Under the pieces are notes generated by a model. It saw only the letters and a program-made list of their open reading frames with translations, searched no databases and was not told where the DNA came from. Positions 17,527 through 62,353 of a DNA stretch of 64,000 bases are shown here, one piece after another (the first letter of the stretch is position 1; each line of letters starts with the position of its first letter). The stretch is from positions 434,001-498,000 of the forward strand of contig JANJGN010000323.1 in the NCBI GenBank assembly GCA_026770705.1, written 5' to 3'. The translations under genes and the position numbers were made by a program. The DNA is from Isurus oxyrinchus. Lineage: Eukaryota.

Positions 17527-20500
17527 CTACAGAGAAATGGAAACAGAAGACATCCTCACATCATTTACTGGCACTGATAGGGTTAAATTATTGTGCAGCC
17601 TCATTAGTGTCAGTCGTGTCTCAGTGGGTTTAACCCTTTTTTCACTCTCTTTCTCTGTCTCTCTTTCTCTTTCTCTCTCTTGTCACCCGCCCGAGAGGGC
17701 AGACGGGGGACTCGGTTTAGTGTCTAATATTGGACTAATCTCCAGGCGAGGTTGGCTGGATGGATTATTGACAAGGTCCATTCACCCTGTAAAGAGTTTC
17801 TCTGGTTTGAAATACCCGATCAAACATCGAGTTCTGTGTCTAAACCTTGTGTTGAAAAGACACCTTTCCAGCTCTTCACCTGCCATTAGCTTGTTGAGTC
17901 TTCACATGCTCCGTCTGTCCGTGACCAACCCCTCTTAGCTCATCCTTTCCTTGTCGTACATCGAGCTGTTCATCCTGACGGGTTCCCTCCTTCCCAGTAA
18001 CACTCCAACTCCGACATCAAACTAACTCCCAACACATTGATGAATTGTATGGATTCCAGCGTCAGTTGGTTCTGTCTGAGGCTGTTTCTCTGATCAGGGA
18101 CCGAGCTGTTCTGAACGGACATTGTGTTCAGCAGTTCTTATTGCAGATCAGGCTGTTCAACCAATGCTGCTGTTCACTGAGGTGACTCCGATTCTACATT
18201 CACACATTAATGATCTCATGTCCAGCAGCAAACATCTGAATGAAGCCAGGTTCAAGAAAAATCCCAGCTGCTTGATCCGACAGTTATCTGTTCAGGCATG
18301 GCCCCTTGTTCCAAATAACAAACATTATTTAAAAATAGTCATCACATGAGCCTGGTTAACAAGGAAATGAAACCATGAACAATTTGCAGTAAAGTGAAAC
18401 ATACAAGACTAATCTATTTATATTGAGCTGATGATATAGAATTTTACACGAGGCATGTTGCTGATTTCAAACATCATCTGAATTACGGCAGTTCTGACAG
18501 TGCAGCACTCCCTCAGTACTGACCCTCTGACAGTGCAGCACTCCCTCAGTACTGACACTCTGACAGTGCAGCACGCCCTCAGTACTGACCCTCTGACAGT
18601 GCAGCACTTCCTCAGTACTGACCCTTTGACAGTGCAGCACTCCCCCAGTACTGACCCACTGACAGTGCAGCACTCCCCCAGTACTGACCCACTGACAGTG
18701 CAGCACTCCCTTGGTACTGAATCCAGAGATACAAGGAAGAGACTGAAGAGCTGACGATTCAGCTGAATTAAAAAACAGAGGCAGTTACAGAATCACAACA
18801 AGTTTACAGAGCAGAAGGAGGCTATTCAGCCCCTCGAGCCTGTTGCACAGGAGAGGCCATTCAGCCCCCTCGAGCCTGTTACACAGGAACAGGAAGAGGC
18901 AATTCAACCACATTCTTGATACCAAAGGGGTTACCAGTTTGCTTACGGTGGAAGACAAAGAGTTGGTTTCTCAAATTCACACAAACCAACTCACATTTTG
19001 ACTCACAGAGACACATTCACCCTTTCTAATTAAATACACAGAGGGAGGAGCACAGGAAGAGGTCATTCAGCCCAAGCAGAGCGTGTGGGCAGTTCCTCCC
19101 CAGGCGAGCAGTCGGACAGGTCCTGGGTAAGTAACGGAACGATTGGAATTCACTTCCACCACCAACACCGTCCTTTGTTGATGTTGTGACTTTATAAAGA
19201 CAGATTCCAATGATTGATGCCTTTGAAAGATTTCTACTGATTATTGAGATCTGGGTGTGAGGCTCAAGTCTGTTGTACAGAACATCTTTCTTGCTCAAGT
19301 GATGAGGAAAATGGGATGCCCTGAGCTGGTGAAAGGTGCTATAGAAATGCAAGCCCTTCATTGTTTTTCTTTCTTAAAGCCTTGTAACTCTCTGCAGAAC
19401 ACCTATCATCCCACAGAGAATCAAATTAGTCTGTGAAGTCATTGTCTAAAAGGAGTTCTGATCTCTTGAGATCTGTTGGTCAAGACGTGAGGTCTTATTA
19501 ACTCCTTTCTCTTTCTGAGTTTGAGAGTGAGAAGTGGATGGAATATCTGGGAGTGGACAATGATCGGGAAATCTTACTTCCTCCTGACACTTCTCCAAAG
19601 TAATATCATCATCAGATTTAATGTTAATAATCTCTGTAAAGGATCATTCTTATTGAGCTGTGATTGGGAACCGATTCAGCAGTGAGCCAGTGTACAAACT
19701 CATACCAAGTCCCATTCACCCATCACCCCTGTGCTCACTGATATACACTGATTCTCTGTCTGACAGCAGAATTGGAAGTGATCAGAGATCTCAGAGAGTT
19801 GTAGGGACTGGAGGACGTTACAAATTTAAGCAGAATTGTAGCAGCGAGAGCAGAATCTTAAAATTCAGGTGCTATCGGTTGTTGGTCAGTGAGCGATGGG
19901 GAGTGATGGGTTGAGTAGAGAAGCAAAGATAAAAACTGGGGGATGAAGTCTATCCTGCTGCGAGGTCTCCGATAGCAATGGCCTGAAATTTGTGTCCTTT
20001 GCTGCCTTTATTCAAAATTTCCCATGAAGACAGCACAGCAGCTCCTAGAATAGACAGGCTGTTCAGTGTCACACTTCCTGTCCATTCACACCATGCTAGA
20101 TACTTCAATAAGGGAGCAAGATAACTGATAGAGAGAAGGAAGGTAAAGCTGTCTGTGTGTAAAACTGTCAAATATTCTGAGTTATCATGAGTGTCTCTGA
20201 TCTGCTGCAGAGTTTAAATTTCACAGAATCTGAGCACTTTGCAGCTCAGAGAGAGACCATTGACTCACTGCCTGAAAGGCCGGTGGAAGCAGATTCAACA
20301 GGAACTTTCAGAAGGGGAACTGGATAAATACTTGAAGGGAAATTTGCAGGGATGTGTGAAAGGTGCTGGAGAGGAATTGGGAAAGAGCCAGCACATGCAC
20401 GATGGGTCAAATGAGCTCCTCCTGTGTTGTATCATTCAACAATCAGACAATTTAAGACCCTTGTCAGCAAATCTTCAGAATCCTGCTGAATCACAGATGT

Positions 20501-20777
20501 TTCAGAAGGACAGGGAACAAAAAGTTTCTGGTATCAGCGTTTCATGTGGGGCCCAGTTCAGTTTGAACAAATAAACAACACCATCTTTGAAAGTCATGAA
20601 CCCAACACAGCGGCACCTCCGACACATGCAGAGCTCAGGCTAGAGGCGCTTTGTTAGTGTGTTTCACAGTGTCTGCTGGAGTAGGGTCAGTGCTGAGCTT
20701 GGGGACAAGTCAGTCTACAATGCTGCATCGGAATCAACAATGCAACAATATGGGGTTTGGATCAGAAATAATCCATT

Positions 20778-21045
20778 AGACAATGAGGATCCAAAGAGAT
20801 TCCTTAGACAATGAGGATCCAAAGAGATTCCTTAGACAATGAGGATCCAAAGAGATTCCTCAGACAATGAGGATCCAAAGAGATTCCTCAGACAATGAGT
20901 GTCCAAAGAGATTCCTTAGACAATGATGGTCCAAAGAGATTCCTTAGACAATGAGGGTCCAAAATGATTCCTCAAACAATAAGGATCCAAAGAGATTCCT
21001 CAGACAATGAGGATCCAAAGAGATTCCTTAGACAATGAAGATACA
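20778..21045. repeat. 28-bp tandem repeat (AGACAATGAGGATCCAAAGAGATTCCTT), about 9-10 units; shorter arrays at about 4876-4997 and 58200-58310
   Basis: Head-to-tail units without spacers. Confidence 0.9.
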
Positions 21046-21798
21046 AAGTGCACCAATCAGATTGAACCAGATTAGCCAATCAGCTGTGTTGAAGAGCAGA
21101 CAGGAATGTTAGGCTAATTAGTGATTCATGACGGTGATAATGGGGGGAGTTGTGAGGGCTCCTAATCCATTGTCCTGTCTTGTAAATCAGCACTGAATGG
21201 ATCTCAATTGGTGGGTCTTGTAGAGTCTGTGTTGGGTGGAAGACTGGCTTCACTAAGGGGAAGCGGTAGCAGAGAGTATTGTCACTGGGCTAGTATTCCA
21301 GAGGCCCAGGTTGATGCTCTGGGGCCCTGGGTGTGAATCCTATCACAGCAGATGAATGGGATTAAAAAGCCTGGTTCACTGATCACCTATAGGGAAGGAA
21401 ATCTCCACCCTTACCCAGTCTGGCCTACATGTCACTCCAAACCCACAGCAATACAATTGATTCTTAAATGCCTCTGATGGACATGGGATGGGTAATACAT
21501 GCTGGGCACATCCCATGAACGGATAATTTGAAAAACACATGACTTGGAGACACTGTGTTGGGTGGAAGACTGGCTTCACTAAACAGGGTCCTGAGGACCA
21601 TGAGCCAATGTAGAATGAACTTGTCCACTCCTGTGTCCAGGATTCTCTTCCATCCATTGTGAAACCTTGGCAGATCCCTGTTTGTCCTGTAGATGGTCCA
21701 CACTGCAGCCACTGTGCCCCAGTGATGGAGGGGGTGGATACCGAGTCTAGTGGATCTACAAACCATCCAGAGTTAAATATTGATATTTCTCTCCCCAG

Positions 21799-22167
21799 TT
21801 GGACTGTCACAAGAGTGGAAAGGTGACACTCCACGAGAGGTGACAGCGCAGGAAGATTCGTGTGTACAGATTCCATGTCATTACAGTTATCCATCACATT
21901 TGGAAAGCCGACCATGAGTCGGAGTCTGGTTTAATAACGAGAATCAGATTCCTGGATCTCCCATTGCCTTTCACTCCAAGGACCACAGTCACGAGTTACC
22001 ACGGTTCCACCATCGGACCCGGCTGTCTGGAGACCTGAAAGATGGCGACTGTTCCCTGATTATAAACAACATCAGACGGGAAGATGCAGGACCTTATTTT
22101 TTCAGGATAGAATTTGACAGCAGAAATAGATACAGCTACTATCCTGTAACCCAGCTTCACATTTCTG
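21799..22167 (+). pseudogene. Gene B V-set exon with nonsense codon
   Basis: 369 nt; reads ..HLESRP*VGVWFNNE..YFFRIEFDSRNRYSY. Confidence 0.85.
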
Positions 22168-22567
22168 GTAAGTGCTGTGTTATAATTACTCAACAATTCA
22201 CATTCAACACTCAATGGGAAATAACACAAACTGTGACGTTTACATATTAACACAAAACACAGCTTATTATAACACACTGTCTGATTTTCAATAACCTGCT
22301 GATAGCTTCCAGTTCAGTCCTAAAGCAACCTCTATTACTCACTTTAATATCAATGATTAAATATATTGACTGTGTCCATCAAAGTTATCAGGTTATCCAC
22401 TCTCATCGATCTCTCTAATCCTGTTTAAAATAATTTCCTGATCATTGTAATCTCTCAGTTCTGATATCATCCTTGTAAAAGTGCTTTCTCTTGTGGGACT
22501 GTGATTTCTATTTGAACTGATGCTTCACGTTATATTTCTCTAAAAGGATCCATTTTCTGTCTGTTAG

Positions 22568-22864
22568 ATTTCACAGATAAACCCATGATATTCCCTGCTG
22601 AAATTATTGCAGGAAAGCGTGTGGATGTAAGCTGCACCTTCAACACAACGTGCAATGGAACAGCAGCACCTGTCTTAACCTGGGACACTCCCACTGACGT
22701 ACCTGGATCAGTCTCAAACACTGTAACTCAGCATGGTGTCACTCTGACCTATACTTCTGTTCTGACCCTGATCCCATCACTCAAACACCACGGACACACT
22801 CTCAGCTGCAGAGTGAGATATCCATCTGTTTCATCGGAGCGGACCCTCGTACTAACTGTACAAG
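22568..22864 (+). CDS. Gene B first C2-set exon (open)
   Basis: 297 nt, AG/GT intact, but downstream of a nonsense codon. Confidence 0.7.
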
Positions 22865-23084
22865 GTAAGTATGGACATCCTTCATTATACATTCGCTGGA
22901 ACAGTCTAGATTATGCACAGCAGGATCCCTTAGAAAGGTATTCTGATGAGAACCAGATTATCTGTAGTTTAGGGAAAAACACTGACCAGAAAACAGTCAA
23001 TGACAGTTTCTGAACATTAACACTGGAGCTTTTTTTTCCAGCCAAGAAGCTGACAGAGCAGAGCATCACTCACAATATACTAAC

Positions 23085-23870
23085 CCCCTGACAGTGCAGC
23101 ACTCCCTCAGTACTGACCGCCTGACAGTGCAGCACTCCCTCAGTACTGACCGCCTGACAGTGCAGCACTCCCTCAGTGCTGATCCTCCAACAGTGCAGCA
23201 ATCCCTCAGTACTGACCCTCCAACAGTGCAGAACTCCCTCAGCACTGACCCTCTGACAGTGTAGCACTCCCTCAGTACTGACCCTCTGACAGTGCAGCAC
23301 TCCCTCAGTACTGACCTGCTGAAATTGCAGCTCTCCCTCAGTACTGACCCTCTGACATTGCAGCACTCCCTCAGTACTGACCCTCCAATAATGAAACAAT
23401 CCCTCAGTACTGACTCTCCAACAGTGCAGCACTCCTTCACTGCTGACCCTCCAACTCTGCAGTGCTCCCTCAGGACTGAAAATCCAACATTTCATATCTC
23501 CCTCCTGACCGACCCTCTGAAAATACAGCAGATCCTCGGTCGAGACTTTCAAACAGTGCAGCACTTCCACAGTACTGAATCTCCCCCCCACCCACAGTGC
23601 AGCACTTCCAAAGTACTGAACCTCTGACAGTGCAGCACTCCCTCAGTACTGACCCTCCCACCTGCAGCACTCCCTCAGTACTGACCCTCCCACCTGCAGC
23701 ACTCCCTCAGTACTGACCCTCCCACAGTGCAGCACTCCCTCAGTACTGACCCTCCCACATGCAGCATTCCCTCAGTACTGACCCTCGCACATGCAGCACT
23801 CCCTCAGTACTGACCCTCCCACATGCAGCACTCCCTCAGTACTGACCCTTTGACAGTGCTGCACTACCTC
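23085..23870. repeat. 30-bp minisatellite array
   Basis: Tandem CAGTGCAGCACTCCCTCAGTACTGACCCTC units. Confidence 0.9.
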
Positions 23871-24096
23871 ACTATTGGCTTTAAACTAAATAGAGTGTGG
23901 GGCGAATGTTTCTGGAGAGGGTATATGTACAGTTACAAACCAAAAGGATTTATTAGCATTGCAGGATAGCTGTTTTGGCAACGATACCCAGTGTGTGACA
24001 GGAAGGGACACAGTGTCCAAACATAAAAATACATCAGCAAATAGTGTCAGAGGGGAGGGAATGATAAAAAGACAAAATTAATGGCTCTTTACTTAA

Positions 24097-24760
24097 ATGC
24101 ACATAGTATTTGGAATGTTGGCCTTTATTTCAAAGGGAATGGAGTATAAAAATAGGGAAGTCTTGCTAAAACTATACAAGGCACTAGTTAGACCACACCT
24201 AGAATACTGTGAGCAGTTTTGGTTCCCTTATCTAAGGAAAGATGTACTGGCATTGGAGGCAGTCCAGAGAAGGTTCACTAGGTTGATCCCAGTAATGGAG
24301 GGATTTTCATATGAGGAGAGGTTGAGTAGGATGGGCCTGTACTCATTGGAGTTTAGGAGAATGAGAGCTGACCTTATTGAAACATATAAGATTCTTAGGG
24401 TGCTTGACAGGGTAGATGCTGAGAGGTTGTTTCCCCTTGTGGGAGAGTCTAGGACCAGAGGGCATGATCTCAGAGTAAGGGGTCACCCATTTAAGACAGA
24501 GATGAGGAGTTTCTTCTCTCAGAGGGTAGTGAATGTGTGGAATTCTTTACTGCAGAAAGCTGCAGAGGCTGGGTCATTAATTATATTCAAGGCTGAGATA
24601 CACAGTTTTTTAATCAGTCAGGGAATCAAAGGCTATGGGGAAGAGGCAGGAAAGTGGAGTTGAGGATTGTCAGATCAGCCATGGTGTCATTGAATGGCGG
24701 AGCAGAGTTGATTGGCCGAATGGCCTCCTTCTGCTCTGACGTCTTGTGGCTTATGGTCTT
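24097..24760 (+). mobile_element. CR1 LINE 3' end (ORF2 C-terminus and 3' UTR)
   Basis: LYKALVRPHLEYC..QRRFTRLIP..RRMRADLIETYKI..FFSQRVVNVWNSL. Confidence 0.9.
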
Positions 24761-25315
24761 ATCACCCTCCAACAGTGCAGAGCTCCCTAATTACTGACCC
24801 TCCGACAGTGCAGCACTCTTCCAGTACTGACCCTCCGACAGTGCAGCATTCCCTCAGTACTGACCCTCCAACAGTGCAGAGATCCCTAATTACTGACGCT
24901 CCGACAATGCAGCACTCTTCCAGTACTGACCCTCCGACAGTGCAGCATTCCCTCAGTACTGACCCTCCAACAGTGCAGCACTGCCTCAATACTGACCCTC
25001 CAACAGTGCAGCACTCCCTCAGTGCTGACCCTCCGACAGTGAAGTACTCGCTCAGTACTGACTATGCGGCAGTGAAGCTTTCACAGTACCCACCCACCAT
25101 CAGTACAGCAGGTCCTCAGTACTCACCCTCCAACAGGGCAGCACTCCCTCAGTACTGACCCTCCAACAGTGCAGCACTCCCTCAGTACTGAACTGAAGAG
25201 TCTGCCTGAATTATGTGCTTTGTGGTGAAGGATTGATATTACACCTTTAACATTGTCAGGGTCTCTGAAAGTGCTTCACAGTCAATGTAAGTAACTGATC
25301 TTTATTTGTTTTTAG

Positions 25316-25583
25316 ATGCACCACAGAATCTCTCAATTACTTTTCATGATATGATTAACACTTCATGGATCAATATAATTGAGGGGAATTCTGCAGTGAT
25401 AATCTGCTCTGTCAAGAGCTTCCCAGCTTCTAACCTGACGTGGCGACATCTTAATGTCCCAATGAACAGAACAAGTTCCAACAATGAGCTGTGGTTGGTG
25501 ATTCCTCACCTTACATCCAGGGACACTGGAGACTATCAGTGTGTGGCAGAGAATGAACATGGAGCAGTGGAGGGGTTCATAAA
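25316..25583 (+). pseudogene. Gene B D3-type exon, donor deleted
   Basis: DAPQNLSI..YQCVAENEHGAVEGFI then diverges. The inverted paralog near 8625 keeps the GTGAG donor. Confidence 0.75.
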
Positions 25584-25589
25584 CATTCT

Positions 25590-26590
25590 GTTTTTATTAG
25601 CTCATGGGATGTGGGTAGTGTTGACAAGACCAGAAATCATTGCCCATCTGTAACTGCCCCTTGAGAAGGTGGTGGTGAGCTGCCTTCTTTAACCACTGCA
25701 GTCCATGTGGTGTAGGCACACCCACAGTGCTGTTAGGGAGGGAGTTCCAGGATTTTGACCCAGCGACGGTGAAGGAACGGCCGATATATTTCCAAGTCCC
25801 AGGGCAGACCACCACCTCAAGTTCACTTGCAAATCACACACCTCACTGACTTGGAACTGTCTTGGTGGAAGAGGTTAAGAGTTTGGAAGGTGCTGTCGAA
25901 GGAGCCTTGGTGAGTTGCTGCAGTGCATCTTGTAGATGGTGCACATTGCTGCCATTGTGTGCCAGTGGTGGAGGGTATGAATGTTTATGCTGGTGGATGG
26001 GCTGTCAATCAAACAAGCTGCTCCTGGATGGTGTCGAGCTTCTTGAGTGTTGTTGGAGCTGCACTTATCCAGCCAAGTGGAGATTATTCCATCACACTCC
26101 TGACTTGTGCCTTGTCCGATGGTGGACAGGCTTTGGGGAACCGCAGAGTTCCCAGCCTCTTACCCGCATTTGTAGCCACACTATTTCCTGTTGCCGGGAT
26201 GTTGCCAGGGCCAATAGCCTTTGCTGTATCCAGTATCATCAGCTGATTCCTGATGTCACGTGGAGTCAATTGAATTGTCTGAAAGCTGACATCTGTGATG
26301 CTGGGACCCTCTGGAGGAGGCCGAGATGGAGCATCCACTCAGCACTTCTGGCTGAACATGGTTGCCAATGCTTCAGCCTTGTCGTTTGCACTGATGTGCT
26401 GAGTTCCCCCATCATTAAGGATGGGGATATTTGTGGAGCATCCTCCTCCTGTTAGATCTTTAATTGTCCATCACCATTCATGACTGGATGTGGCAGGTAT
26501 GCAGAGCTGAGATCTGACCCGTTGGTTGTGGGATCGCTTTGCTCTGTCTATAGCATGTTGTTTCCGCTGTTTGGCGTGTATGTAGTCCTG
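25590..26590 (-). mobile_element. Degenerate CR1-group LINE fragment
   Basis: Reverse complement of 7590-8600. Confidence 0.65.
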
Positions 26591-26809
26591 TGTGTCACCT
26601 CAGCAGCTTGGCACCTCTGTTATATGTGAATCCTCCTTATAGAAACCTGCATGTACATGGATATTATCAATAAATATTACATAGCTATATGTTATTTGTA
26701 TAGACCTTTCATGCATAGACAATATCACTTCACAAGTTCAGAATTACTACATGTACATAGGGAACCATTCTCAAACTGTACCGGAGTCATTCATTGGCTG
26801 ATTTTACAG

Positions 26810-26906
26810 GGCGAGATTCCAATGAATGGAAAGCAGGATTGCTTGGAGCTGGAATCTGTTTGAGTGTTGGACTGAGTGGATTCTTCATCTTCAAGTGTGT
26901 GAGAAA
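26810..26906 (+). CDS. Type-B transmembrane exon (RDSNEWKAGLLGAGICLSVGLSGFFIFKCVRK)
   Basis: 97 nt, phase 1-2, homologous to 50225-50321. Confidence 0.75.
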
Positions 26907-27614
26907 GTAAGTGTGAAGCTTTAATTGGTTGTTTTTGAACATGTTTTCTTCAACGTTCTCTCCTTATAGAAAGAACTTGCATTTCTATAGCAACTTTTCC
27001 AACCCAAAACCCTTCACAGCCCCTGAAGAGCTTTGATGTTCACTCATTGTTTAACATCTCATCCAACATTCACTGTTTCACAACTCAGTCCTGTAACTGA
27101 CAGTGTTGACCCGGACCATAAAATACCTTGTGACTTCCTGAGGTTGTGAAAGCTGCTATACAAATGAAAACCTTCCTTTTGTTAGTGAATGCAATCTCTT
27201 TCCATTTTGCATGTTTCATTCACTCTCTCTTATCTCCACTAATGCTGGCCTTCTCATTCTCTCTCTCTCTCATTCACTCTCTCTCCAATCTCCACTAATG
27301 CTCTCCTTCTCATTCTCTCTCTCATCCTCTTACACGTTGTTCAGTATCTCACATTTTTAAGGAGTGCTGAGCAACATCTGCTCCTTCAGAAGATCCACCT
27401 CAACACCTGGAGTGAGCAGTGAAATGAAACTTGCTCAACGACTGTTCAGCTTTACACAGGAATCACGTCACAGAGTCAGGACACAAAGGGTTAACAGTTT
27501 GCTTACAACACAACACTAAGGCCCTACATTTCAATGAAAGGGTTTTCACAATTGTTCCCCAATTCCTGATTTGACTCACAGTGACACATCAACCCTTTCT
27601 CATTAAATACACAG

Positions 27615-27699
27615 AGGGAGCAGCACAGGAAGAGGTCATTCACCCCAAGCAGAGCGTGTGGGCAGTTCCTCCCCAGGCGAGCAGTCGGACAGGTCCTGG
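27615..27699 (+). CDS. Type-B cytoplasmic exon 1 (GSSTGRGHSPQAERVGSSSPGEQSDRSW)
   Basis: ACACAG acceptor, GTAAGT donor, phase 2-0, open. Bridges the TM exon to the phase-0 tail exons. Confidence 0.6.
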
Positions 27700-28210
27700 G
27701 TAAGTAACGGAACGATTGGAATTCACTTCCACCACCAACACCGTCCTTTGTTGATGTTGTGACTTTATAAAGACAGATTCCAATGACTGATGCCTTTGAA
27801 AGATTTCTACTGATTATTGAGATCTGGGTGTGAGGCTCAAGTCTGTTGTACAGAACATCTTCCTGGTTAAATTATGCAGACAGGTTACACACAGTCTACG
27901 ATTATATTCCCTCAGGTCTAGAAGATTAAGGAGTGATCTAACTGAGGGATTCAAACTGATTAAACACTCGATAGGGTCGACAGAGAGAAGCTATTCCCTC
28001 GAGTGGGGGTGGTTGGTGGGGGTCGGGTGGAGTCCAGAACAAGGGGGCCGGAACTTCAGATTGGAGCCAGGCCGTTCAGGGGTGATGTCAGGAAGCACTT
28101 CTTCACACAAAGGGGAGTGGAAATCTGGAACTCTCTCCCCAATAATCAAACCCAACACCGAATACACATCATGTTGATTGTCACTCTGTCCATTTCCATC
28201 TCTATTACAG

Positions 28211-28315
28211 AAGAGAGGCGAGGGGAAAGCAGGAATCAAATCGAACCATCGTGTTGATGAATATCAAGGTCCTGTTTATGAAAACTGTGAGCGTGGTTGG
28301 GCTTTGAGGAATCAG
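28211..28315 (+). CDS. Type-B cytoplasmic exon 2 (KRGEGKAGIKSNHRVDEYQGPVYENCERGWALRNQ)
   Basis: TTACAG acceptor, CAG|GTGAGT donor, phase 0-0. Confidence 0.55.
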
Positions 28316-28450
28316 GTGAGTCACACACCACAGGATCCCCAGCCTCTCAGCTGCTCCAGTAGCCTGGTTATTGATATGGCTGCTCCAGTCCTGTATCTGC
28401 ACTGTTTTATACAGTCACTCCCAAACCCAACCAAACTCACACCCAACACC

Positions 28451-28635: not shown

Positions 28636-28732
28636 AATGTATGTATTGTGGGTGGAATTTTCGATTTGGATCAATAATACTAAACACTGATCACTCTGAT
28701 TGTCACTCTGATCATTTCTGTTTCTATTACAG

Positions 28733-28849
28733 AAGAAAGATGAGAAGGATCTGGAAATGAAATCTAACCGCGGAGTCAATCCTGATACAGATGATGATCT
28801 TTACGCAAACTGTGATTTTGCCAAGGATTCTGTTTATGGGAATTTATAA
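28733..28849 (+). CDS. Type-B terminal exon (KKDEKDLEMKSNRGVNPDTDDDLYANCDFAKDSVYGNL*)
   Basis: TTACAG acceptor, TAA stop, two Tyr motifs after an acidic stretch. Confidence 0.65.
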   Translation, partial: KKDEKDLEMKSNRGVNPDTDDDLYANCDFAKDSVYGNL

Positions 28850-31473: not shown

Positions 31474-31513
31474 ATGATCGGGAAATCTTACTTCCTCCTG
31501 TCACTTCTCCAAG
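31474..31513 (+). CDS. Siglec/MAG-like gene C, signal peptide exon (MIGKSYFLLSLLQ)
   Basis: ATG at 31474, donor CAAG|GTAATA in phase 1. Joined to the V exon it reads ...LLQVGLS/QEW, a plausible cleavable leader. Acceptor TTTCAG ends at 31431. Confidence 0.8.
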
Positions 31514-37703: not shown

Positions 37704-38072
37704 TTGGACTGTCACAAGAATGGGAAAGTAACACTCCACGAGAGGTGACAGCGCAGGAAGGTTCATGTGTACAGATTCCATGTCATTACAATTACCCATC
37801 ACATTTGTTAGAGAAAACACGTGTCGGAATCTGGAATATGAGGAGGGACAAATGGAATACATTGTCTACAGCCTTTCACTCCAAGGATCACAGTCACGAG
37901 TTACCACGGTTCCACCATCGGACCCGGCTGTCTGGAGACCTGAAAGATGGTGACTGTTCCCTGATTATAAACAACATCAGACGGGGAGATGCAGGATTTT
38001 TTTTTTTCAGAATAGAATTTGACAATGGTCGGAGCCACAACTATTATCCTGTAACCCAGCTTCACGTTTCTG
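37704..38072 (+). CDS. Gene C V-set Ig domain exon V1 (Siglec-type)
   Basis: CCCCAG acceptor, G|GTAAGT donor, 369 nt, phase 1-1, open. Siglec hallmarks EGSCVQIPC, GDCSL and FFFRIE (F-strand Arg). Confidence 0.88.
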
Positions 38073-40302: not shown

Positions 40303-40671
40303 CTGAACCCTCACAAGAGTGGAAAGGTGACACTCCACGAGAGGTGACAGCGCAGGAAGATTCGTGTGTACTGATTCCGTGTCATTACAGTTATCCATCG
40401 TGTCTGGAAAACCAACCGCGAGGTGGAGTCTGGTTTAATAATGAGGAACAGATTTCCTGGGCTCCCATTGCCTTTTACTCCAAGGATCACAGTCACGAGT
40501 TACCACGGTTCCGCCATCGGACCCGGCTGTCTGGAGACCTGAAAGATGGCGACTGTTCCCTGATTATAAACAACATCAGACGGGAAGATGCAGGACCTTA
40601 TTTTTTCAGAATAGAATTTGACAATGGTCCGAGCCATAACTATTACCCTGTAACCCAGCTTCACGTTTCTG
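40303..40671 (+). CDS. Gene C V-set Ig domain exon V2 (Siglec-type)
   Basis: 369 nt, phase 1-1, open, canonical AG/GT. Motifs EDSCVLIPC, GDCSL and YFFRIE. Confidence 0.88.
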
Positions 40672-41484: not shown

Positions 41485-41781
41485 ATTTCACAGATAAACC
41501 CATGATATTCCCTGCTGAAATTATTGCAGGAAAGCGTGTGGATGTAAGCTGCACCTTCAACACAATGTGCAATGGAACAGCAGCACCTGTCTTAACCTGG
41601 GACACTCCCACTGACGTACCTGGATCAGTCTCAAACACTGTAACTCAGCATGGTGTCACTCTGACCTATACTTCTGTTCTGACCCTGATCCCATCACTCA
41701 AACACCACGGACACACTCTCAGCTGCAGAGTGAGATATCCATCTGTTTCATCGGAGCAGACCCTTATGCTAACTGTAAAAT
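41485..41781 (+). CDS. Gene C first C2-set exon (Siglec domain-2 type)
   Basis: TGTTAG acceptor, T|GTAAGT donor, 297 nt. DFTDKPMIFP..VSCTFNTMCNGTAAPVLTW..LSCRV carries the extra Cys used for the V-to-D2 disulfide in Siglecs. Confidence 0.88.
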
Positions 41782-42149: not shown

Positions 42150-44215
42150 AGGTACATAGAAACTAGGAGCAGGATTAGGACATTCAGCCCTTCAAGCCTT
42201 CTCCGCCATTCAATATGATCAAGGCTGACCCTCTATCTCAAAGCCTTATTCCCGCTTTCTCTCCGTACCCTTTGATGCCCCTAATATCAAAATATTTATC
42301 AGTTTCTTTCTTGAATACACTCAGTGACCCGGCCTCCACAGCCTCTGTGATGGAGAATTCCACAGATTGACCACCCTCTGAGTGAAGAAATGTTTCCCTA
42401 TCTCAGTCCAAAATGGCCTGCCCTGTATCCTGAGATTGTCGCCCTTGGTTTTAGACTCCCCAACCAAGGGATGCATCCTCCCTCCATCCAGTCTGTCTAT
42501 CTCTGTTAGAATTTCTTACGTTTATTCAGGTCTCCTCTCATTCTTCTAAACTCTAGTGAATACAGACCCAGTCGTACCAATTCTCCTCATACGACAGTCC
42601 TGCCGCCCCTGGTATCAGCCTAGAGAACCTTCTCTGCGCTCTCTCGACGGCAAGTCTATCCTTTTTTAGGGAGGGAGACCAAAACGGCACGTAGTACCCC
42701 ATGTGCAGTCTCACCAAGACCTTGTATAACTGCAGTAAGACATCCCTACTCCTGAACACAAATCCTCTTGCAATGAAGGCCAACATACCATTTGCCTTCC
42801 AAATTACTTGCTGCACCTGCCTGTTTACTTTCATTGGCTAGTGCACAAGGACACCCAGATCCCTTTGTACATCCACATTTCCCATTATATCACCATTTAA
42901 ATAATACTCTGCCTTTCTGTTTTTCACACCAAAGCCTACAATGTCACATTCATCCACATCATCTGCCATGTGTTTGCCCACACACACAACATGTCTAAAT
43001 CGCCTTGAAGTCTCTTTGCATCCTCCTCACAGCTCACACCCTTACCCAGCGTTGTGTCATCAGAAAACCTGGAAATATTGCACTTGGCTCCCTCACCCAA
43101 GTCATTTAAATATATCGTGAATAGTTAGGTCCCAAGCACGGATCCCTGTGGTACACCACTAGTCACTGCCTGCCACTCAGATAAAGACTAATTTATTCTG
43201 ACCCTCTGTTTCCTGTCTGTTGACCAATTCTCAATCCATGCCAGTAAATTACCCCCAATCCCATGGGCTTTAATGTTGCCCACTAGCCTCTTATGTGGGA
43301 CCTTATCAAAAGCCTTCTTGAAATCTAAAAACACCACATCCACTGGTTATCCCTTATCTATTCCACAAGTTACATCCTCAAAATCTCCAGTAGATTAGTT
43401 AAGCATGATTTTCCTTTCATTAACCCATGCTGACTTTGTCTAATCCCATTAATGCTTTCCAAGCGTTCCGTTAGCACACCTTATATAATAGGCTCTAGCG
43501 TTTTCCCCATGACTGATGTTAGACTAACTGGTCTGTAATTCTCTGATTTTTCTCTCCCTTCTATTTTAAATAGTGGGGTTACAATTGCCACCCTCCAATC
43601 TATAGGAACTGCTCCAGAGTCTATAGAATTTTGGAGGATGACCACCAGTGCTTCCAATATTTCCAGGGTCACTTCCGTTAGTCTCTGGGATGTAGATTTT
43701 CAGGCCCTGGGGACTGTTCAACTTTTAACCCATTAATTTCTCCAGCTCCATTTTTTAAAACTAATCCTGATTATCTTCAATTCCTCCCTCTCACTAGACA
43801 CTTGGTTCCCTAACATTCCTGGGAAATTATTTGTGTCCTCTTTTGTGAAGACAGAACCAAAATATATGTTCAGTTCTTCTGCCATTTCTTTGTTTCTCAT
43901 TAGAATTTCCCCCATTTCTGACTGCAAGGAACCTACATCGGTCACTGCTAATCTTTCTCTCTTCACATATTTATAGAAGCTTTTACAGTCGGTTTTTACG
44001 TTCCCTGCAAGTTTACTCCCATGTTCCATTTTCCCCTTCTTGATCAATCTTTTTGTCCACTTTTGCTGAATTCTAAACTGCTCCCAATCCTCAGCATTGC
44101 TGCTTCCCCTGGCAATTTTATGTCTCCTCTCTGGATCTAATACTATCCCTAATTTCTTTTGTAAGCCCTGGTTGAGCACCATTTCCTGACTTATTTTTAC
44201 GCCAGACAGAAATGG
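42150..44215 (-). mobile_element. CR1 LINE ORF2 fragment (about 2 kb, frameshifted)
   Basis: KSFYKYVKR, DWRVAIVTPLFK..NYRPVSLTS and ANGMLAFIARG motifs. Confidence 0.9.
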
Positions 44216-45335: not shown

Positions 45336-46183
45336 TAGTGGGGGGTGTTCGTGACCATCAGTGTGGAAGGGTTAGGTTTACAGGTTACACAGACCAGACA
45401 CACACCAACAGACACACACACACATGTAAGCACGCACATTCACACGCACACGCGCACACACACAACACACACACGCACACGCACACACACACACACACAC
45501 ACACGTAAGCACGCACATNNNNNNNNNNNNNNNNNNNNNNNNNNNNNNNNNNNNNNNNNNNNNNNNNNNNNNNNNNNNNNNNNNNNNNNNNNNNNNNNNN
45601 NNNNNNNNNNNNNNNNNNNNNNNNNNNNNNNNNNNNNNNNNNNNNNNNNNNNNNNNNNNNNNNNNNNNNNNNNNNNNNNNNNNNNNNNNNNNNNNNNNNN
45701 NNNNNNNNNNNNNNNNNNNNNNNNNNNNNNNNNNNNNNNNNNNNNNNNNNNNNNNNNNNNNNNNNNNNCACTCAGTGCTGCACTGGAGTCTCGGTGTCAG
45801 CTCCGATTCTGTGTTGAAGGAAGGTAAACTCCGGATCAACAAGACCCTGAATTGGATGGAGCAACCTCCTTAACAGAGAATTGTAGATTTACCCCTCAGT
45901 GCTCCATCGATCAAATATAATTCATTGCCTGTCAAGCCCTTGGGGACATCCTGAGGATGTGAAAGGCAGTTTCTTTAAATCTGGATGGGCAGCGTCTCTG
46001 GTGGGAGAATGCTCCTGCAGTGTGACAGTTTACATAGGCAGTGCCCATTGTAAATGTGACATAGGAACTTATCTTGAGAGAAGGTGCCTAGAAATGCACA
46101 CAGGCATCAGTTACAGCGAGATGATACAGGAAGTTTTGCTGTGCACTGTGTTTGCTCACATTAAAATCTTTATATATTTTTAG

Positions 46184-46465
46184 ATGCACCACAGAATCTC
46201 TCAATTACTTCTCTTGATATGATTAACGCTTCATCGATCAATATAATTGCGGGGAATTCTGCAGTGATAATCTGCTCTGTCGAGAGGTTCCCAGCTTCTA
46301 ACCTGACGTGGCGACATCTCAATGTCCAAATGAACAGAACAAGTTCCAACAATGAGCTGTGGTTGGTGATTCCTCACGTTACATCCAGGGACACTGGAGA
46401 TTATCAGTGTGTGGCAGAGAATGAACATGGAGCAGTGGAGGGGTTCATAACCATCACTGTGGAAT
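46184..46465 (+). CDS. Gene C second C2-set exon (D3 type)
   Basis: TTTTAG acceptor, T|GTGAGT donor, 282 nt. YAPQNL..IICSVERFPASNLTW..DTGDYQCVAENEHG. Confidence 0.88.
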
Positions 46466-46469
46466 GTGA

Positions 46470-47994: not shown

Positions 47995-48520
47995 GGAGGG
48001 TTGTAGAGGCTGGAGGAGTTTACAGAGATAAGGAAGGTTGTAGGGGCTGGAGGAGGTTACAGAGATAGGGACGGTTGTAGGGGCTGGAGGAGGTTACAGA
48101 GATAGGGAGTGTTGTAGGGGCTGGATGAGGTTACAGAGATAGTGAGGGTTGAAGGGTCTGGAGGAGGTTACAGAGATAGGGAGGGTTGTAGAGGCTGGAG
48201 GAGTTTACAGAGATAGGGAGGGTTGTGGGGGCTGGAGGAGGTAACAGAGTTAGGGAGGGTTGTGGGGGCTGGAGGAGGTTACAGAGATAGAGAGGGTTGT
48301 GGGGGCTGGAGGAGGTTACATAGATAGGGAGGGGTGTAGGGATGGAAGGTGGTTGCGGAGTTAGCGAGTTTTATAGGGGCTGTAGGAGGTTACAGGGATA
48401 GGGACGGTTGTGGGGGTTGGAGGAGGTTACAGAGATAGGGAGGGTTATAGGTGCTGAAGGAGGTAACAGAGATAGGAAGGGTTATAGGGGCTGGAGGAGG
48501 TAACAGAGATAGGGAGGGGG
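47995..48520. repeat. 37-bp minisatellite, reverse orientation
   Basis: GGAGGAGGTTACAGAGATAGGGAGGGTTGTAGGGGCT units. Confidence 0.88.
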
Positions 48521-48828: not shown

Positions 48829-49122
48829 ATAAGCCGGAGATTTCCCAGCAGTCGGAGTGCACTCGGAGATCAGAGGGGGTCACCTGCGTCTGTGTGACCA
48901 CCTCCAACCCACCGGGAGACCTCACCTGGCACCTGCCCAGTGCCAACATCAGTGGTAACCAAACACACGGAGATTTTGTGTCGTGGCAGGTCAGAGATGG
49001 GCATCTGGTGACTGGTTCCCTCACCCTGATGAGACCTCAGGATGAGGGGGGAGTGATTGCATCCTGCTTGGTTCAAAACCCACATGGGGAAGCCATGTTC
49101 AAGGTGTATCTGTGGGTCAAAG
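48829..49122 (+). CDS. Gene C membrane-proximal Ig exon (MAG domain-5-like)
   Basis: CCTCAG acceptor, AAG|GTGAGA donor, 294 nt. YKPEISQQSECTRRSEGVTCVCVTTSNPPGDLTWHLPSANIS..SCLVQNPHG shows the C-x-C..SNP pattern I recall from the membrane-proximal domain of MAG and CD33-related Siglecs. Confidence 0.85.
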
Positions 49123-50224: not shown

Positions 50225-50321
50225 GTAGAGACTCCAGTAAATGGACAGTAGGATTGTTCACGGCTGGGATCATGTTGAGTGTTTTCCTGGCTGGAATCTT
50301 CATCTTCATCTGTGTGAGAAA
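50225..50321 (+). CDS. Gene C transmembrane exon (GRDSSKWTVGLFTAGIMLSVFLAGIFIFICVRK)
   Basis: TTACAG acceptor, AA|GTAAGT donor, 97 nt, phase 1-2. Uncharged hydrophobic span followed by basic stop-transfer residues. Confidence 0.85.
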
Positions 50322-51044: not shown

Positions 51045-51126
51045 GAGAAGGACAGCAATGGAGGAGAGAGTTTCAGGGACCAGAGACATTGCATTGACCC
51101 TCAGTTCACTCTCTGTGAACCACCAG
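51045..51126 (+). CDS. Gene C cytoplasmic exon 1 (RRTAMEERVSGTRDIALTLSSLSVNHQ)
   Basis: TTGCAG acceptor, CAG|GTACAG donor, 82 nt. Phase 2-0 exactly bridges the TM exon and the terminal exon. Confidence 0.75.
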
Positions 51127-52358
51127 GTACAGGAGCTGTTTACACTCACTCCAAAGCTTCAATCTCAGTGTGTAGACAACACATGTCCCAGATTCCCAGC
51201 CCAGTTACCCACTGATTTGTACCTGTGGAGTCAGCAATGGTTCAGTATCATGCTGTCTTTCTGTTATGACACAGCAACTGGTAAAGGCTGTTGTTTAAAA
51301 TCCCAGAGGAAACTTTAAACAACTGTCATAACCTATATTTCCCAGTGGAATGTTTGAGATGCAGCTCTAAATTCAGGAATAAGAGCACCAGTTCTCGACA
51401 TGGGTGTTATATCAAACTACATGAGACATTTATTAATTTACACAAGTTAAACATATGCACATGGCTACAAGCGAGTATTATCATAACTTTTTAACAAATT
51501 CCCAAACTAATCTCCTCTAAGACAACCCATAGACTTTAAGCAGACACCAGGCAAAGCATTTTCACCTCACAAATTCCAAATGAGGTTCCTTTCACTTTGG
51601 TTCCTTTGCAGACAGATGTAGGCTTACAGCTGCTTTGATGTTACAAGCCTCTGCTCTGCACACACAAAACTGCTCAAGTTATACCCAATGCTTCTCTTTG
51701 AATGTAAATTCTCACTGAATCATCAGGACCTTTGAACTCCACCCTTCATCGTATCAATTTTATTAGTAATATAAACATTGATTCGTTTAAGATTTCACTC
51801 CCAGACATTGAATGCTCTGTTTAAAAATGGAAATTACCCCTTTACCTCTTTGTTTACATCTCAAAACTACTTGACATCAAAGTACCCGGACTGGCTGGCT
51901 TTAATCCAATTAAAACACTCACACACACACACCCACAGACTAAACCTCTGTTTAAAAAGACAATTTCCAATTACATTACATACATTAATAGATTAATAAC
52001 ACCCTATCTCTATCCCTTTCTCTCTTTCTCTTCCCTCTCATCTTCTCTCTGATTACAAGGTTCTTGTTAATGAGCCTCACGTCAGGTACCTGAATGCAGA
52101 ATCCAAGCCGGCACTCGCCAGAGACATTACCGAGGGAGTGCGAGACTGACAGAGGGTCAGTCCTGAGGGAGTGCTGCGCTGTCGGGGGTCAGTACTGAGG
52201 GAGTGCTGCCCTGTCATAGGTGGTTTCTTTTTTATGATATGAGAGAGAGAGTAAAACCAACTGAGACACGACTGACACTAATGAGGCTGCACAATAATTT
52301 AACCCTATCAGTGCCAGTAAATGATGTGAGGATGTCTTCTGTTTCCATTTCTCTGTAG

Positions 52359-52607
52359 GGTAAACAGAACGTGCTGATTACTGAGCCCCGGAACACAACC
52401 AGAGACACAACTAGCGAGGGGGAGACCCCAGCTCCCCGGGGTCTCTCTGAAGGTCCAGTGGGAGGTGGTGCTGGACATGGGAACCCTGACAATCCCAACG
52501 ACCTTCTCTACGCCAATCCCCAAGTCTTCAGGGTGCGCAGTGGTGATGGGACTGTCCACAAGGAAGAGGAGACGGAATACGCACAGATCAGATTCAAGCG
52601 AAACTGA
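52359..52607 (+). CDS. Gene C terminal cytoplasmic exon with degenerate ITIM (LLYANP) and ITSM-type motif (TEYAQI)
   Basis: CTGTAG acceptor, phase 0, TGA stop. Two-tyrosine layout typical of CD33-related Siglec tails. Confidence 0.85.
   Translation, partial: GKQNVLITEPRNTTRDTTSEGETPAPRGLSEGPVGGGAGHGNPDNPNDLLYANPQVFRVRSGDGTVHKEEETEYAQIRFKRN

Positions 52608-62351: not shown

Positions 62352-62353
<2 letters not shown>

What the first reader, a model, noticed from the sequence alone, without database searches (positions are those of the whole stretch)
19042..52607. Candidate paired-receptor Siglec system: near-identical ectodomains wired to two different TM/tail cassettes
Seen: genes B and C share leader, V, C2 and D3 exons and intron flanks at very high identity, but they diverge in the TM exon and have unrelated tails. 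C has a MAG-D5-like domain, a neutral TM and LLYANP/TEYAQI. B has no D5-like exon, a Gly-rich TM flanked by Lys (WKAGLLGAGICLSVGLSGFFIFKC) and a YENC/YANC/YGNL tail. The type-B TM occurs twice (26810 and 7264) and the ITIM tail twice (52359 and 17278). Established: mammalian SIGLEC5/14 and SIGLEC11/16 are inhibitory/activating pairs homogenised by gene conversion. Inference: an independently evolved paired Siglec family in a probable cartilaginous fish.
Basis: partly seen in the sequence, partly recalled or inferred. Interest (0 to 1): 0.8.

Follow-up and report, generated by a model that had tools for sequence, protein, structure and literature searches.

The report
Shark Siglec genes with two tails
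Two neighbouring shark immune-receptor genes of the sialic-acid-sensing (Siglec) type share very similar outer parts but end in different signalling tails; the second tail type is kept across sharks and rays, though the copy carrying it here looks broken.

Summary
The sequence facts mostly hold. Genes B and C share leader, V, C2 and D3 exons at 89-98% nucleotide identity, which is high but not near-identical. Similarity stops at the end of D3.

Gene C (31474-52607) is an open, phase-consistent nine-exon model. It has two V exons, a MAG-D5-like domain and an LLYANP/TEYAQI tail.

Gene B is defective as assembled. It has an in-frame TGA in its V exon (21915-21917) and has lost the D3 exon end with its splice donor (25586). 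The second type-B TM and the second ITIM exon are orphan fragments.

The two TM exons are homologous (66% amino acids). Both TM cores are uncharged, so nothing points to DAP12-type pairing.

The type-B cassette is TM, a frame-keeping 85-nt exon and two tail exons. It appears in annotated models of 11 shark, ray and skate species. Contigs from public runs show it spliced.

Its C-terminus is YxNC-x7-YxN(I/L/V). That is ITAM-spaced but not a canonical ITAM, and it is Grb2-type by motif.

V-domain trees mix the tail types, which fits exon exchange or gene conversion.

Whether type B activates is unknown. The scan found the same system on other pieces of this genome. I found no paper on it.

The parts
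19042..19126 (+). Copy of the 85-nt exon upstream of gene B's leader. It is part of a ~300-bp unit found 6 times in the window.
   Evidence: Alignment of six copies, mean column identity 92%; tblastn of P0160/P0159.
19560..19599 (+). Gene B leader exon (MIGKSYFLLTLLQ, phase 0->1).
   Evidence: It matches the N-termini of P0015 and P0002.
21799..22167 (+). Gene B V-set exon with an in-frame TGA at 21915-21917.
   Evidence: The three paralogous V exons are open at this point.
22568..22864 (+). Gene B C2-set exon (297 nt, phase 1->1), intact.
   Evidence: Pfam PF08205 E 7e-9; splice sites.
25316..25586 (+). Gene B D3 Ig exon. Its 3' end and splice donor are removed by a ~34-bp deletion.
   Evidence: Four-copy alignment. 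The remaining 271 nt would shift the phase.
26810..26906 (+). Type-B transmembrane exon (…EWK-AGLLGAGICLSVGLSGFFIF-KCVRK), phase 1->2.
   Evidence: A contig in run X7 covers exactly 26810-26906 with foreign sequence on both sides, and run X1 has the joint 26906->28211.
27615..27699 (+). 85-nt juxtamembrane exon (GSSTGRGHSPQAERVGSSSPGEQSDRSW), phase 2->0. It is needed to keep the tyrosine tail in frame.
   Evidence: The same 28-aa segment sits between the TM and tail in P0160, P0159, P0165, P0007 and P0015.
28211..28315 (+). Type-B tail exon 1 (…VDEYQGPVYENC…), phase 0->0.
   Evidence: 94% to P0160. Spliced to tail exon 2 in X5 contig record 23 and in X1 loose ends.
28733..28849 (+). Type-B tail exon 2 with stop (…DDDLYANCDFAKDSVYGNL*).
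   Evidence: Contigs continue into the 3' UTR.
31474..31513 (+). Gene C leader exon.
37704..38072 (+). Gene C first V-set exon, open, Arg kept.
   Evidence: It pairs with Cetorhinus P0002 V1 at 99/94 support.
40303..40671 (+). Gene C second V-set exon, open, Arg kept.
   Evidence: It pairs with P0002 V2 at 97/95 support.
41485..41781 (+). Gene C C2-set exon.
45519..45768 (.). Assembly gap inside gene C's C2->D3 intron, within a (CA)n tract.
   Evidence: Not filled.
46184..46465 (+). Gene C D3 Ig exon (282 nt, phase 1->1).
48829..49122 (+). Gene C MAG-D5-like Ig exon (294 nt).
   Evidence: MAG residues 396-479, E 3.6e-11.
50225..50321 (+). Gene C transmembrane exon, homologous to type B (25/38 aa).
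51045..51126 (+). Gene C 82-nt juxtamembrane exon (RRTAMEERVSGTRDIALTLSSLSVNHQ).
   Evidence: It matches P0010 and P0155.
52359..52607 (+). Gene C tail exon (LLYANP … TEYAQI, stop).
   Evidence: 88% identical to C. carcharias P0010.
7264..7360 (-). Second type-B TM exon, in a remnant. Only the last ~70 nt of a D3 exon lie upstream (8688-8620), next to an N gap. No tail exons follow; the next gene's 5' unit does.
17278..17526 (-). Orphan ITIM-type tail exon (LLYANI … TEYAQI), open. No TM or Ig exons lie upstream of it on its strand.

Best explanation
The window is part of a tandem and inverted cluster of Siglec-type (CD33/MAG-like) receptor genes in a shark close to Lamniformes.

Two gene kinds share ectodomain exons. 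I infer that they are kept similar by unequal crossing-over or gene conversion.

Kind one is gene C. It has two lectin V domains, three Ig domains, an uncharged TM and a tail of the CD33-related-Siglec pattern: a proximal LLYAN(P/I) motif and a distal TEYAQI motif. I infer that it recruits SHP-type phosphatases.

Kind two is type B. It has a homologous but diverged TM, an 85-nt frame-keeping exon and two paralogous tail exons. The tail ends in YxNC-x7-YxN(I/L/V).
- I infer that this tail docks Grb2-family adaptors after tyrosine phosphorylation.
- That would give a signal different from the ITIM kind, most likely co-stimulatory.
- Skipping the 85-nt exon would give a short tail without tyrosines.

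The type-B copy in this window (gene B) is a decaying copy, with a nonsense codon in V and a lost D3 donor.

Shown here: gene structures, the lesions, homology, conservation, splicing, and V domains not sorting by tail type. Inferred: all signalling roles.
For: - Siglec nature: Pfam V-set and Ig_CD22 hits. PDB hits are Siglec-5 at 2.3e-15, then Siglec-7, CD33, Siglec-8 and MAG, with the FFRIE arginine aligned.
- Gene C: all nine exons are open, with consistent phases and splice sites. Its two V exons pair with those of Cetorhinus XP_078389734.
- Shared exons are 89-98% nt identical, and similarity ends at D3.
- Type-B cassette in annotated models of 11 elasmobranch species. Of 17 models, 16 end in Yxxx-x7-Yxxx and 12 fit YxN[CW]-x7-YxN[ILV]. 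All 13 shark models keep the TM-B sequence.
- Splicing in public runs: joint 26906->28211 with GT..AG ends in X1; the TM exon at its exact bounds in X7; tail1->tail2->3'UTR in one 1131-nt contig of X5.
- Exchange: the V exon is a mosaic. Tail types are intermixed on the V tree, with 8 changes where 2 is the minimum. The AU test rejects one clade for ITIM-type V domains (p 6e-62) and marginally for type B (p 0.044).
- P0160 carries a type-B tail 90-94% like gene B's on a V domain only ~30% like it.
Against: - No binding or signalling data exist.
- Type B has no charged residue in the TM core, and 0 of 17 models has a canonical ITAM.
- YxN/Grb2 sites act in inhibition in CD22 (PMC5302901).
- SVYGNL also fits the broad ITIM pattern and the YxxØ sorting pattern.
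- Gene C's proximal motif LLYANP fails the ITIM +3 rule, so its inhibitory role rests on TEYAQI alone.
- The RNA/DNA nature of the runs is a guess by the tool. Contigs were accepted from 90% likeness, so they may come from paralogues.
- The X1 joint is marked 'between: not known', so inclusion or skipping of the 85-nt exon is unresolved.
- The gene B lesions were not checked against reads.
- The type-B AU test is marginal, and the group was named after the first tree was seen.
Confidence: 0.45

Rival explanations
1. Type B is not an opposing partner. It is a second inhibitory or endocytic Siglec variant. Its YxN sites would recruit Grb2 into inhibitory complexes as in CD22, and the C-terminal Y-G-N-L/I/V would act as an ITIM or as a YxxØ sorting signal.
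For: - SVYGNL in the window fits [S/I/V/L]xYxx[I/V/L] and YxxØ.
- CD22 uses Grb2 in an ITIM-independent attenuation of calcium (PMC5302901, abstract and passages).
- The TM core is uncharged.
- A weak alignment ties the first tail tyrosine to the ITIM region of the other tail.
Against: - The -2 position of the last tyrosine varies (S, A, P, M) across the 17 models, so it is not a consistent ITIM.
- The conserved features are N at +2 and C at +3, which are not ITIM features.
- The conserved 7-residue spacing suggests a two-tyrosine unit.
Confidence: 0.25
2. In this window there is no functional pairing at all. Gene B and the other type-B and ITIM fragments are debris of segmental duplication. 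The similarity of B and C ectodomain exons only reflects recent duplication followed by decay.
For: - B has a stop in V and a lost D3 donor.
- The minus-strand gene A has a truncated V exon, and A0 is a D3-end-plus-TM remnant. The ITIM exon at 17278 is an orphan.
- A 300-bp unit carrying the 85-nt exon sits before every leader, which marks repeated unequal crossing-over.
Against: - The type-B cassette exons in B are all open with good splice sites.
- Matching spliced contigs exist.
- The cassette is conserved over 11 species, so the gene kind is functional even if this copy is not.
- Mosaic V exons and intermixed trees argue for exchange, not only decay.
Confidence: 0.2
3. The type-B tail is a true ITAM. 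It would recruit Syk-family kinases directly, making type B a self-contained activating receptor.
For: Two tyrosines with ITAM spacing (Yxxx-x7-Yxxx) at the C-terminus in 16 of 17 models, preceded by acidic residues.
Against: The first tyrosine has C or W at +3 in every model. 0 of 17 fit Yxx[LI]-x6-8-Yxx[LI]. N at +2 on both tyrosines points to Grb2-type SH2 domains instead.
Confidence: 0.1

Closest known systems
Human SIGLEC5/SIGLEC14 and SIGLEC11/SIGLEC16 paired receptors
   Same: Neighbouring Siglec genes with very similar ectodomain exons and different signalling ends. There are signs of sequence exchange between paralogues. Papers seen as search listing and abstracts only: PMC4042635 and PMC5701461.
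   Different: The mammalian activating partners have a charged TM residue and signal through DAP12 (as stated in PMC7226832, passages). Type B has an uncharged TM core and its own tyrosine tail. Ectodomain identity here is 86-95% aa. The type-B copy in this window is defective. Opposite signalling is not shown.
CD33-related Siglec inhibitory tails (ITIM plus distal ITIM-like TEYxxI/V)
   Same: Gene C and the orphan exon end in LLYAN(P/I) … TEYAQI. The spacing and the distal motif resemble the mammalian pattern as I recall it. The V domain's best solved relatives are Siglec-5, Siglec-7 and CD33.
   Different: Gene C's proximal motif has P at +3. The membrane-proximal Ig domain is MAG-D5-like. 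The V domain is almost as close to MAG and sialoadhesin. Orthology to the mammalian CD33 cluster was not tested. Bony fish are reported to lack CD33-related Siglecs (PMC7226832, passages), and that paper does not mention sharks.
CD22 (Siglec-2) cytoplasmic tail with a Grb2 site
   Same: A Siglec whose tail works with Grb2 besides its ITIMs (PMC5302901, abstract and passages).
   Different: CD22 also has three ITIMs. Type B has only YxN-type tyrosines.
Grb2-docking YxN tails: immunoglobulin tail tyrosine motif of mIgG; also DAP10 and CD28 (those two recalled)
   Same: Short cytoplasmic tails whose tyrosine with N at +2 recruits Grb2 to amplify signalling (PMC4263166, search listing and abstract).
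   Different: Those have one YxNM motif. Type B has three YxN sites. The last two are fixed 11 residues apart at the C-terminus, with C at +3 of the first.
RefSeq/GenBank models such as XP_041037180 (C. carcharias 'CD33-like'), the C. maximus 'Siglec-13' models P0158/P0159 and the R. typus 'Siglec-13' model P0165
   Same: Same exon order and the same TM, 28-aa segment and tail. P0160 is 90-97% identical to gene B's cassette exons.
   Different: These are automatic predictions with mammalian-derived names. No function or tail class is described.

Membership tests
Siglec (I-type lectin) | N-terminal V-set Ig domain of the Siglec type | tested here: met
   PF07686 and PF24518 (Ig_CD22) are above cut-off for the three V exons scanned: C's two and D's. 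Best PDB relatives are Siglec-5/7/CD33/8, MAG and sialoadhesin, E 2e-15 to 1e-11.
Siglec (I-type lectin) | Conserved arginine on the F strand that binds the sialic acid carboxylate | tested here: met
   The R of YFFRIEF aligns with the R of Siglec-5 YFFRVE. It is present in all four V exons. That this is the essential Arg is recalled.
Siglec (I-type lectin) | Actual sialic acid binding | not testable with these tools
   Needs glycan binding assays.
Siglec (I-type lectin) | V domain followed by C2-set Ig domains and a single TM | tested here: met
CD33-related inhibitory Siglecs | Membrane-proximal ITIM [ILVS]xYxx[LV(I)] plus distal ITIM-like motif | tested here: inconclusive
   Gene C has LLYANP, which fails at +3, plus TEYAQI, which fits. 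The orphan exon 17526-17278 has LLYANI plus TEYAQI, and both fit. The consensus is as quoted in PMC7226832.
CD33-related inhibitory Siglecs | Orthology with the mammalian CD33 cluster | not tested
   The V domain is similarly close to CD33-related Siglecs, MAG and sialoadhesin. One domain is MAG-D5-like.
Paired activating/inhibitory receptors | Adjacent genes with highly similar ectodomains | tested here: met
   89-98% nt in four shared exons plus flanks.
Paired activating/inhibitory receptors | Activating partner with a charged TM residue for DAP12/FcRγ-type adaptors | tested here: not met
   The type-B hydrophobic span AGLLGAGICLSVGLSGFFIF has no charge, and the Lys residues flank it. Arg-TM relatives exist in other species (P0006, P0024, P0076) but not in this window.
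Paired activating/inhibitory receptors | Both partners intact | tested here: not met
   Gene B has a TGA in V and a lost D3 donor. Intact type-B models exist in other species.
Paired activating/inhibitory receptors | Opposite signalling outputs | not testable with these tools
   Needs biochemical and cell assays.
Paired activating/inhibitory receptors | Ectodomain homogenisation (ectodomain tree incongruent with tail type) | tested here: inconclusive
   Mosaic V exon. Tail types intermixed on the V tree. AU p is 6e-62 for ITIM-type and 0.044 for type B, on a 122-column alignment.
ITAM | Yxx[L/I]-x6-8-Yxx[L/I] | tested here: not met
   0 of 17 type-B models fit, and gene B does not fit. The spacing is met in 16 of 17.
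Grb2-SH2 docking site (pYxN) | Asn at +2 of the tyrosine | tested here: met
   YENC, YANC and YGNL in gene B. 12 of 17 models have N at +2 of both terminal tyrosines together with the rest of the strict pattern. Binding itself is untested.

The most novel reading that the evidence does not exclude
Elasmobranchs have a third, undescribed signalling class of Siglec-type receptors. Its own C-terminal double YxN motif (YxNC-x7-YxN[ILV]) has been kept since before sharks and rays split. Inclusion or skipping of an 85-nt exon would switch it between a tyrosine-bearing and a tyrosine-free tail. It is shuffled onto the same lectin ectodomains as ITIM-type and Arg-TM-type partners. That would be a three-way paired-receptor system older than, and mechanistically different from, the primate Siglec pairs.
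Probability: 0.3. Interest if true: 0.7.

Novelty: new variant of a known kind. Interest (0 to 1): 0.45.

Why it matters
Paired Siglecs are described in mammals, and bony fish are reported to lack CD33-related Siglecs (PMC7226832). My searches found no paper on shark Siglec pairs.

If confirmed, this would be a large CD33/MAG-like Siglec family in cartilaginous fish, with exchangeable ectodomains and a conserved non-ITIM, non-DAP12 tail. It would push the paired-receptor design back to early jawed vertebrates. It would also add a new tail type that can be tested directly with phosphopeptide pull-downs.

For this window alone the gain is smaller. One partner is broken, and databases already list the family under borrowed mammalian names.

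Tried and rejected
- DAP12-type activating TM: rejected. No charge lies inside the type-B hydrophobic span.
- Canonical ITAM: rejected (0 of 17 models).
- 'Unrelated tails': softened only. In the window, tail exon 2 scores against the orphan ITIM exon with z 5.1 (1 of 2000 shuffles reach it) and against gene C's exon with z 3.5 (12 of 2000). Tail exon 1 scores no better than shuffles. At DNA level nothing is significant. hhalign of 6 type-B against 5 ITIM-type tails aligns 18 columns, P 0.0065, probability 5.8%. So this is at most a hint.
- MIDAFERFLLIIEIW as the leader: rejected. It has no phase-1 donor. The real leader is MIGKSYFLL….
- Reading the TM exon as ending in phase 0, so that the 85-nt exon would shift the frame: corrected. 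The donor is AA|GTAAGT, so the exon ends in phase 2.
- Bridging of the D3 deletion by independent contigs could not be read. The bins there are swamped by a repeat element.
- Joined models: I searched exon by exon and left out any search with a joined spliced model.
- Supplementary files of papers were not asked for. The whale shark paper's Siglec gene lists are in supplements I did not see.
- Rows left out: P0160's V domain was left out of the second tree because of its long branch. P0070 has no full V domain and gave no row in the V trees. P0005 and P0017 were left out of the tail alignment.

Full report
WHAT THE WINDOW HOLDS

A self-comparison and tblastn of exon peptides show a cluster of duplicated Siglec-type genes.
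- Gene B lies on the + strand, with exons from 19560 to 28849.
- Gene C lies on the + strand, 31474-52607.
- Gene D lies on the + strand from about 56400 and runs off the window's end.
- Remnants lie on the - strand below 8700.

A ~300-bp unit that contains an 85-nt exon-like stretch occurs six times. It sits before the leader of B, C and D, twice on the minus strand, and once after gene B's TM exon. Mean column identity is 92%.

There are four N runs. Only 45519-45768 lies inside the finding.

THE ASSEMBLY GAP

The gap lies in gene C's intron between the C2 exon (ends 41781) and the D3 exon (starts 46184).
- Its left edge is a (CA)n-like tract. A remnant of a D3 exon end lies just before that tract, near 45345-45375.
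- Its right flank is colinear, at 90%, with the sequence that follows a (CA)n tract upstream of gene D's D3 exon.
- No exon abuts the gap.
- The flanking exons are both phase 1->1, so the reading frame does not depend on the gap.
- A further phase-1/1 Ig exon could be hidden there.

THE SIGLEC CLAIM

The V exons of C and D pass the Pfam cut-offs for V-set and for the CD22-like first Ig domain. Gene C's second V exon finds Siglec-5 (E 2.3e-15), then Siglec-7, CD33, Siglec-8, MAG, Siglec-10 and sialoadhesin among solved structures. The arginine of YFFRIE lies on the arginine of Siglec-5 YFFRVE. That this is the sialic-acid-binding arginine is from memory. All four V exons keep it.

MAG residues 396-479 score E 3.6e-11, and the next hit scores 2.7e-6.

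GENE C

With splice sites and phases worked out, gene C has nine open exons:
- leader 31474-31513
- V1 37704-38072
- V2 40303-40671
- C2 41485-41781
- D3 46184-46465
- D5-like 48829-49122
- TM 50225-50321
- tail 52359-52607

The phases run 0->1, then 1->1 five times, then 1->2, 2->0 and 0->stop.

The two V exons pair with the two V domains of a Cetorhinus maximus model, XP_078389734 (support 99/94 and 97/95). The tail is 88% identical to a Carcharodon carcharias model, XP_041037179.

The proximal motif LLYANP does not fit the ITIM consensus at +3. The same P is in the Carcharodon model. The distal TEYAQI fits TxYxxI.

The orphan exon at 17526-17278 has LLYANI and TEYAQI.

GENE B

Leader, C2, TM, 85-nt exon and both tail exons are open and have good splice sites. 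There are two lesions.
1. The V exon has TGA at 21915-21917, where the three paralogous V exons are open.
2. The D3 exon lacks its last ~12 nt and its donor. A four-copy alignment shows a ~34-bp deletion at 25586. The 271 nt that remain would shift the frame.

Skipping D3 would keep the frame, and D3-less type-B models exist in Carcharodon and Cetorhinus. The stop in V remains.

As assembled, B cannot encode a complete lectin receptor. I could not check the two lesions against reads. In one search the bins around 25586 are dominated by a repeat element.

THE TWO SIGNALLING ENDS

The TM exons of B and C are homologous: 25 of 38 residues and 75 of 96 nt match, with the same length and phases. 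Both hydrophobic cores are uncharged. In B the two Lys residues flank a 20-residue span.

After the TM, B needs the 85-nt exon (27615-27699) to stay in frame, because the TM exon ends in phase 2 (donor AA|GTAAGT). Its 28 residues are found at the same place in models from Carcharodon, Cetorhinus, Rhincodon and Chiloscyllium.

The two B tail exons are paralogues of each other (z about 5; 1-2 of 2000 shuffles reach the score).

Between the B tail and the ITIM-type tail, only a stretch around NPDxxDxLYAN aligns.
- Within the window: z 5.1 against the orphan exon and z 3.5 against gene C's exon. Tail exon 1 scores no better than shuffles. Nothing is significant at DNA level.
- hhalign of 6 type-B against 5 ITIM-type tails: 18 columns, P 0.0065, probability 5.8%.

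I treat this as a hint of common origin, not a result.

IS TYPE B A REAL GENE KIND?

A full HMMER search with gene C's second V exon gave 1209 proteins at E up to 0.001, of which the best 150 were listed. Two searches with the tail regions of database proteins gave 10 and 17 hits.

Models with the type-B tail exist in 11 species:
- Carcharodon carcharias
- Cetorhinus maximus
- Rhincodon typus
- Stegostoma tigrinum
- Chiloscyllium punctatum
- Chiloscyllium plagiosum
- Mustelus asterias
- Mobula hypostoma
- Mobula birostris
- Hypanus sabinus
- Rhinoraja longicauda

They carry names such as 'CD33-like', 'Siglec-12', 'Siglec-13' or 'MAG-like'.

Of the 17 models examined (some are isoforms of one gene):
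- 16 end in Yxxx-x7-Yxxx;
- 12 fit YxN[C/W]-x7-YxN[I/L/V], and gene B fits too;
- none fits a canonical ITAM;
- all 13 shark models keep the TM-B sequence, and the 4 batoid models have another TM.

In C. carcharias, the type-B model XP_041037180 and the ITIM-type models XP_041037177-79 have consecutive accessions and lie on one 1.8-Mb contig.

Among the 150 listed hits there is also a third kind, with an Arg in the TM (P0006, P0024, P0076). None is in this window.

RNA EVIDENCE

The run search listed 20 runs, all held as contigs. For most of them 'RNA' is the tool's guess. I laid four runs on 25250-29400 at 90% likeness.

For the model:
- X1 has a joint 26906->28211 with GT..AG ends.
- X1 has loose ends that join 28315 to the start of tail exon 2.
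- X7 has a 162-nt contig that matches exactly 26810-26906, with 1 other letter and foreign sequence on both sides.
- X5 has a 1131-nt contig that joins 28210-28312 to 28730-29400.
- X7 has an 839-nt contig that enters at 28729.

Against, or open:
- The X1 joint is marked 'between: not known'. It may skip the 85-nt exon, which would give a short tail without tyrosines by my own translation.
- X7 has no depth on tail exon 1.
- X1 and X17 also cover introns.
- Contigs at 90-99% likeness can come from paralogues.
- Contigs cannot show expression level.

EXCHANGE BETWEEN GENE KINDS

B and C are 83-85% alike in the 5' region, 88-92% around the V exons and 94-95% around C2 and D3. Nothing beyond 25586/46454 aligns except a repeat element.

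In 50-column windows the B V exon is closest to C's second V exon in the C-C' part (0.80-0.86 against 0.74-0.80 for D). It is closest to D further on (0.96 against 0.72).

On a tree of 27 V domains the three tail kinds need 8 changes where 2 is the minimum. A clade of 9 lamniform-like rows holds 4 type-B and 4 ITIM-type rows, with support 82/80, which is not starred. A Scyliorhinus ITIM-type V domain pairs with an Arg-TM V domain at 100/97.

With P0160 left out, the AU test rejects one clade for the ITIM-type V domains (p 6e-62). It is marginal for type B (p 0.044). The groups were named after the first tree was seen, and the alignment has only 122 columns.

P0160 carries a tail 90-94% like gene B's on a V domain only about 30% like it.

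Together this fits exon exchange or conversion, but it is not a formal test of conversion.

LITERATURE

I found no paper on shark Siglec pairs.
- Searches for Siglec with shark (325 papers hold both words, 15 listed) and for Siglec with elephant shark and evolution gave nothing on the subject. The same was true for Siglecs with cartilaginous fish and CD33-related.
- The whale shark genome paper names Siglecs once, in a list (PMC8455134, one passage).
- A paper on fish Siglecs states that fish genomes lack CD33-related Siglecs. It does not contain the words shark or cartilaginous (PMC7226832, passages).
- Mammalian pairs: PMC4042635 and PMC5701461 (listing and abstracts).
- Grb2 docking at YxN: PMC4263166 (listing and abstract).
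- Grb2 with CD22 in inhibition: PMC5302901 (abstract and passages).

Subscription journals are largely outside the library, so 'not in print' holds only for these searches.

EARLIER NOTES OF THE SCAN

The scan has noted this kind of cluster many times on other pieces of this genome: 422 notes hold the word Siglec. Follow-ups there reached similar readings, including the YxN tail as a Grb2-type site. I used them as leads only.

VERDICT

The reading as a shark Siglec family with exchangeable ectodomains and two tail kinds holds at family level.

In this window the type-B copy is broken. The TM difference is divergence of one homologous exon. The activating role of type B is unproven.

Noticed in passing
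18997-19288, 27570-27861, 30885-31185, 56395-56700, 3950-4295 (-), 6065-6410 (-): A ~300-bp unit holds the 85-nt type-B juxtamembrane exon, its donor and a TATAAAG ~90 nt downstream. It sits before every leader exon. This suggests the array grew by unequal crossing-over with a breakpoint just after that exon (19288/27861). Some RefSeq models in Carcharodon and Cetorhinus (P0161-P0163, P0010) run from this exon into the next gene's leader exon read in another frame.
   Followed up: partly
1750-2968 (-) versus 60828-62045 (+): A 1.2-kb inverted pair at 97.5% identity, 58 kb apart, covers C2 and part of a V exon. The minus-strand V exon is cut off at 2968. It could be a recent inverted duplication or an assembly problem.
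   Followed up: no
37704-38072 and 40303-40671: Gene C has two intact V-set exons in tandem. Multi-V models (2-4 V matches per protein) are common among the top database hits.
   Followed up: partly
9605-10428, 18467-18754, 23053-23871, 24764-25191: 33-nt minisatellites with long open frames on both strands (VSTEGVLHCQR… and its reverse) lie in introns and between genes.
   Followed up: no
38409-39377 and 47995-48518 (inverted): A 37-nt minisatellite is present in two introns of gene C in opposite orientation.
   Followed up: no
62223-62300 and 63028-63310: Gene D has a D3-type exon with an internal deletion, followed by an intact D3-type exon. Each is followed by a (CA)n tract. The unit of exon, (CA)n and intron is tandemly repeated (62298-62996 vs 63292-63971, 81%).
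   Followed up: no
24097-24663, 42553-42834 (-), 43733-44182 (-), 15651-16073 (-): Retroelement-like open frames (reverse-transcriptase-type fragments) are scattered in introns and spacers. One element next to gene B's D3 exon (25640-26460) gave very high contig depth in all four runs.
   Followed up: no
P0006, P0024, P0076 (not in the window): Close V-domain relatives in Scyliorhinus torazame and Chiloscyllium punctatum have a TM with a central Arg (VILILGIRA…). This is a third, DAP12-style kind, absent from this window.
   Followed up: partly
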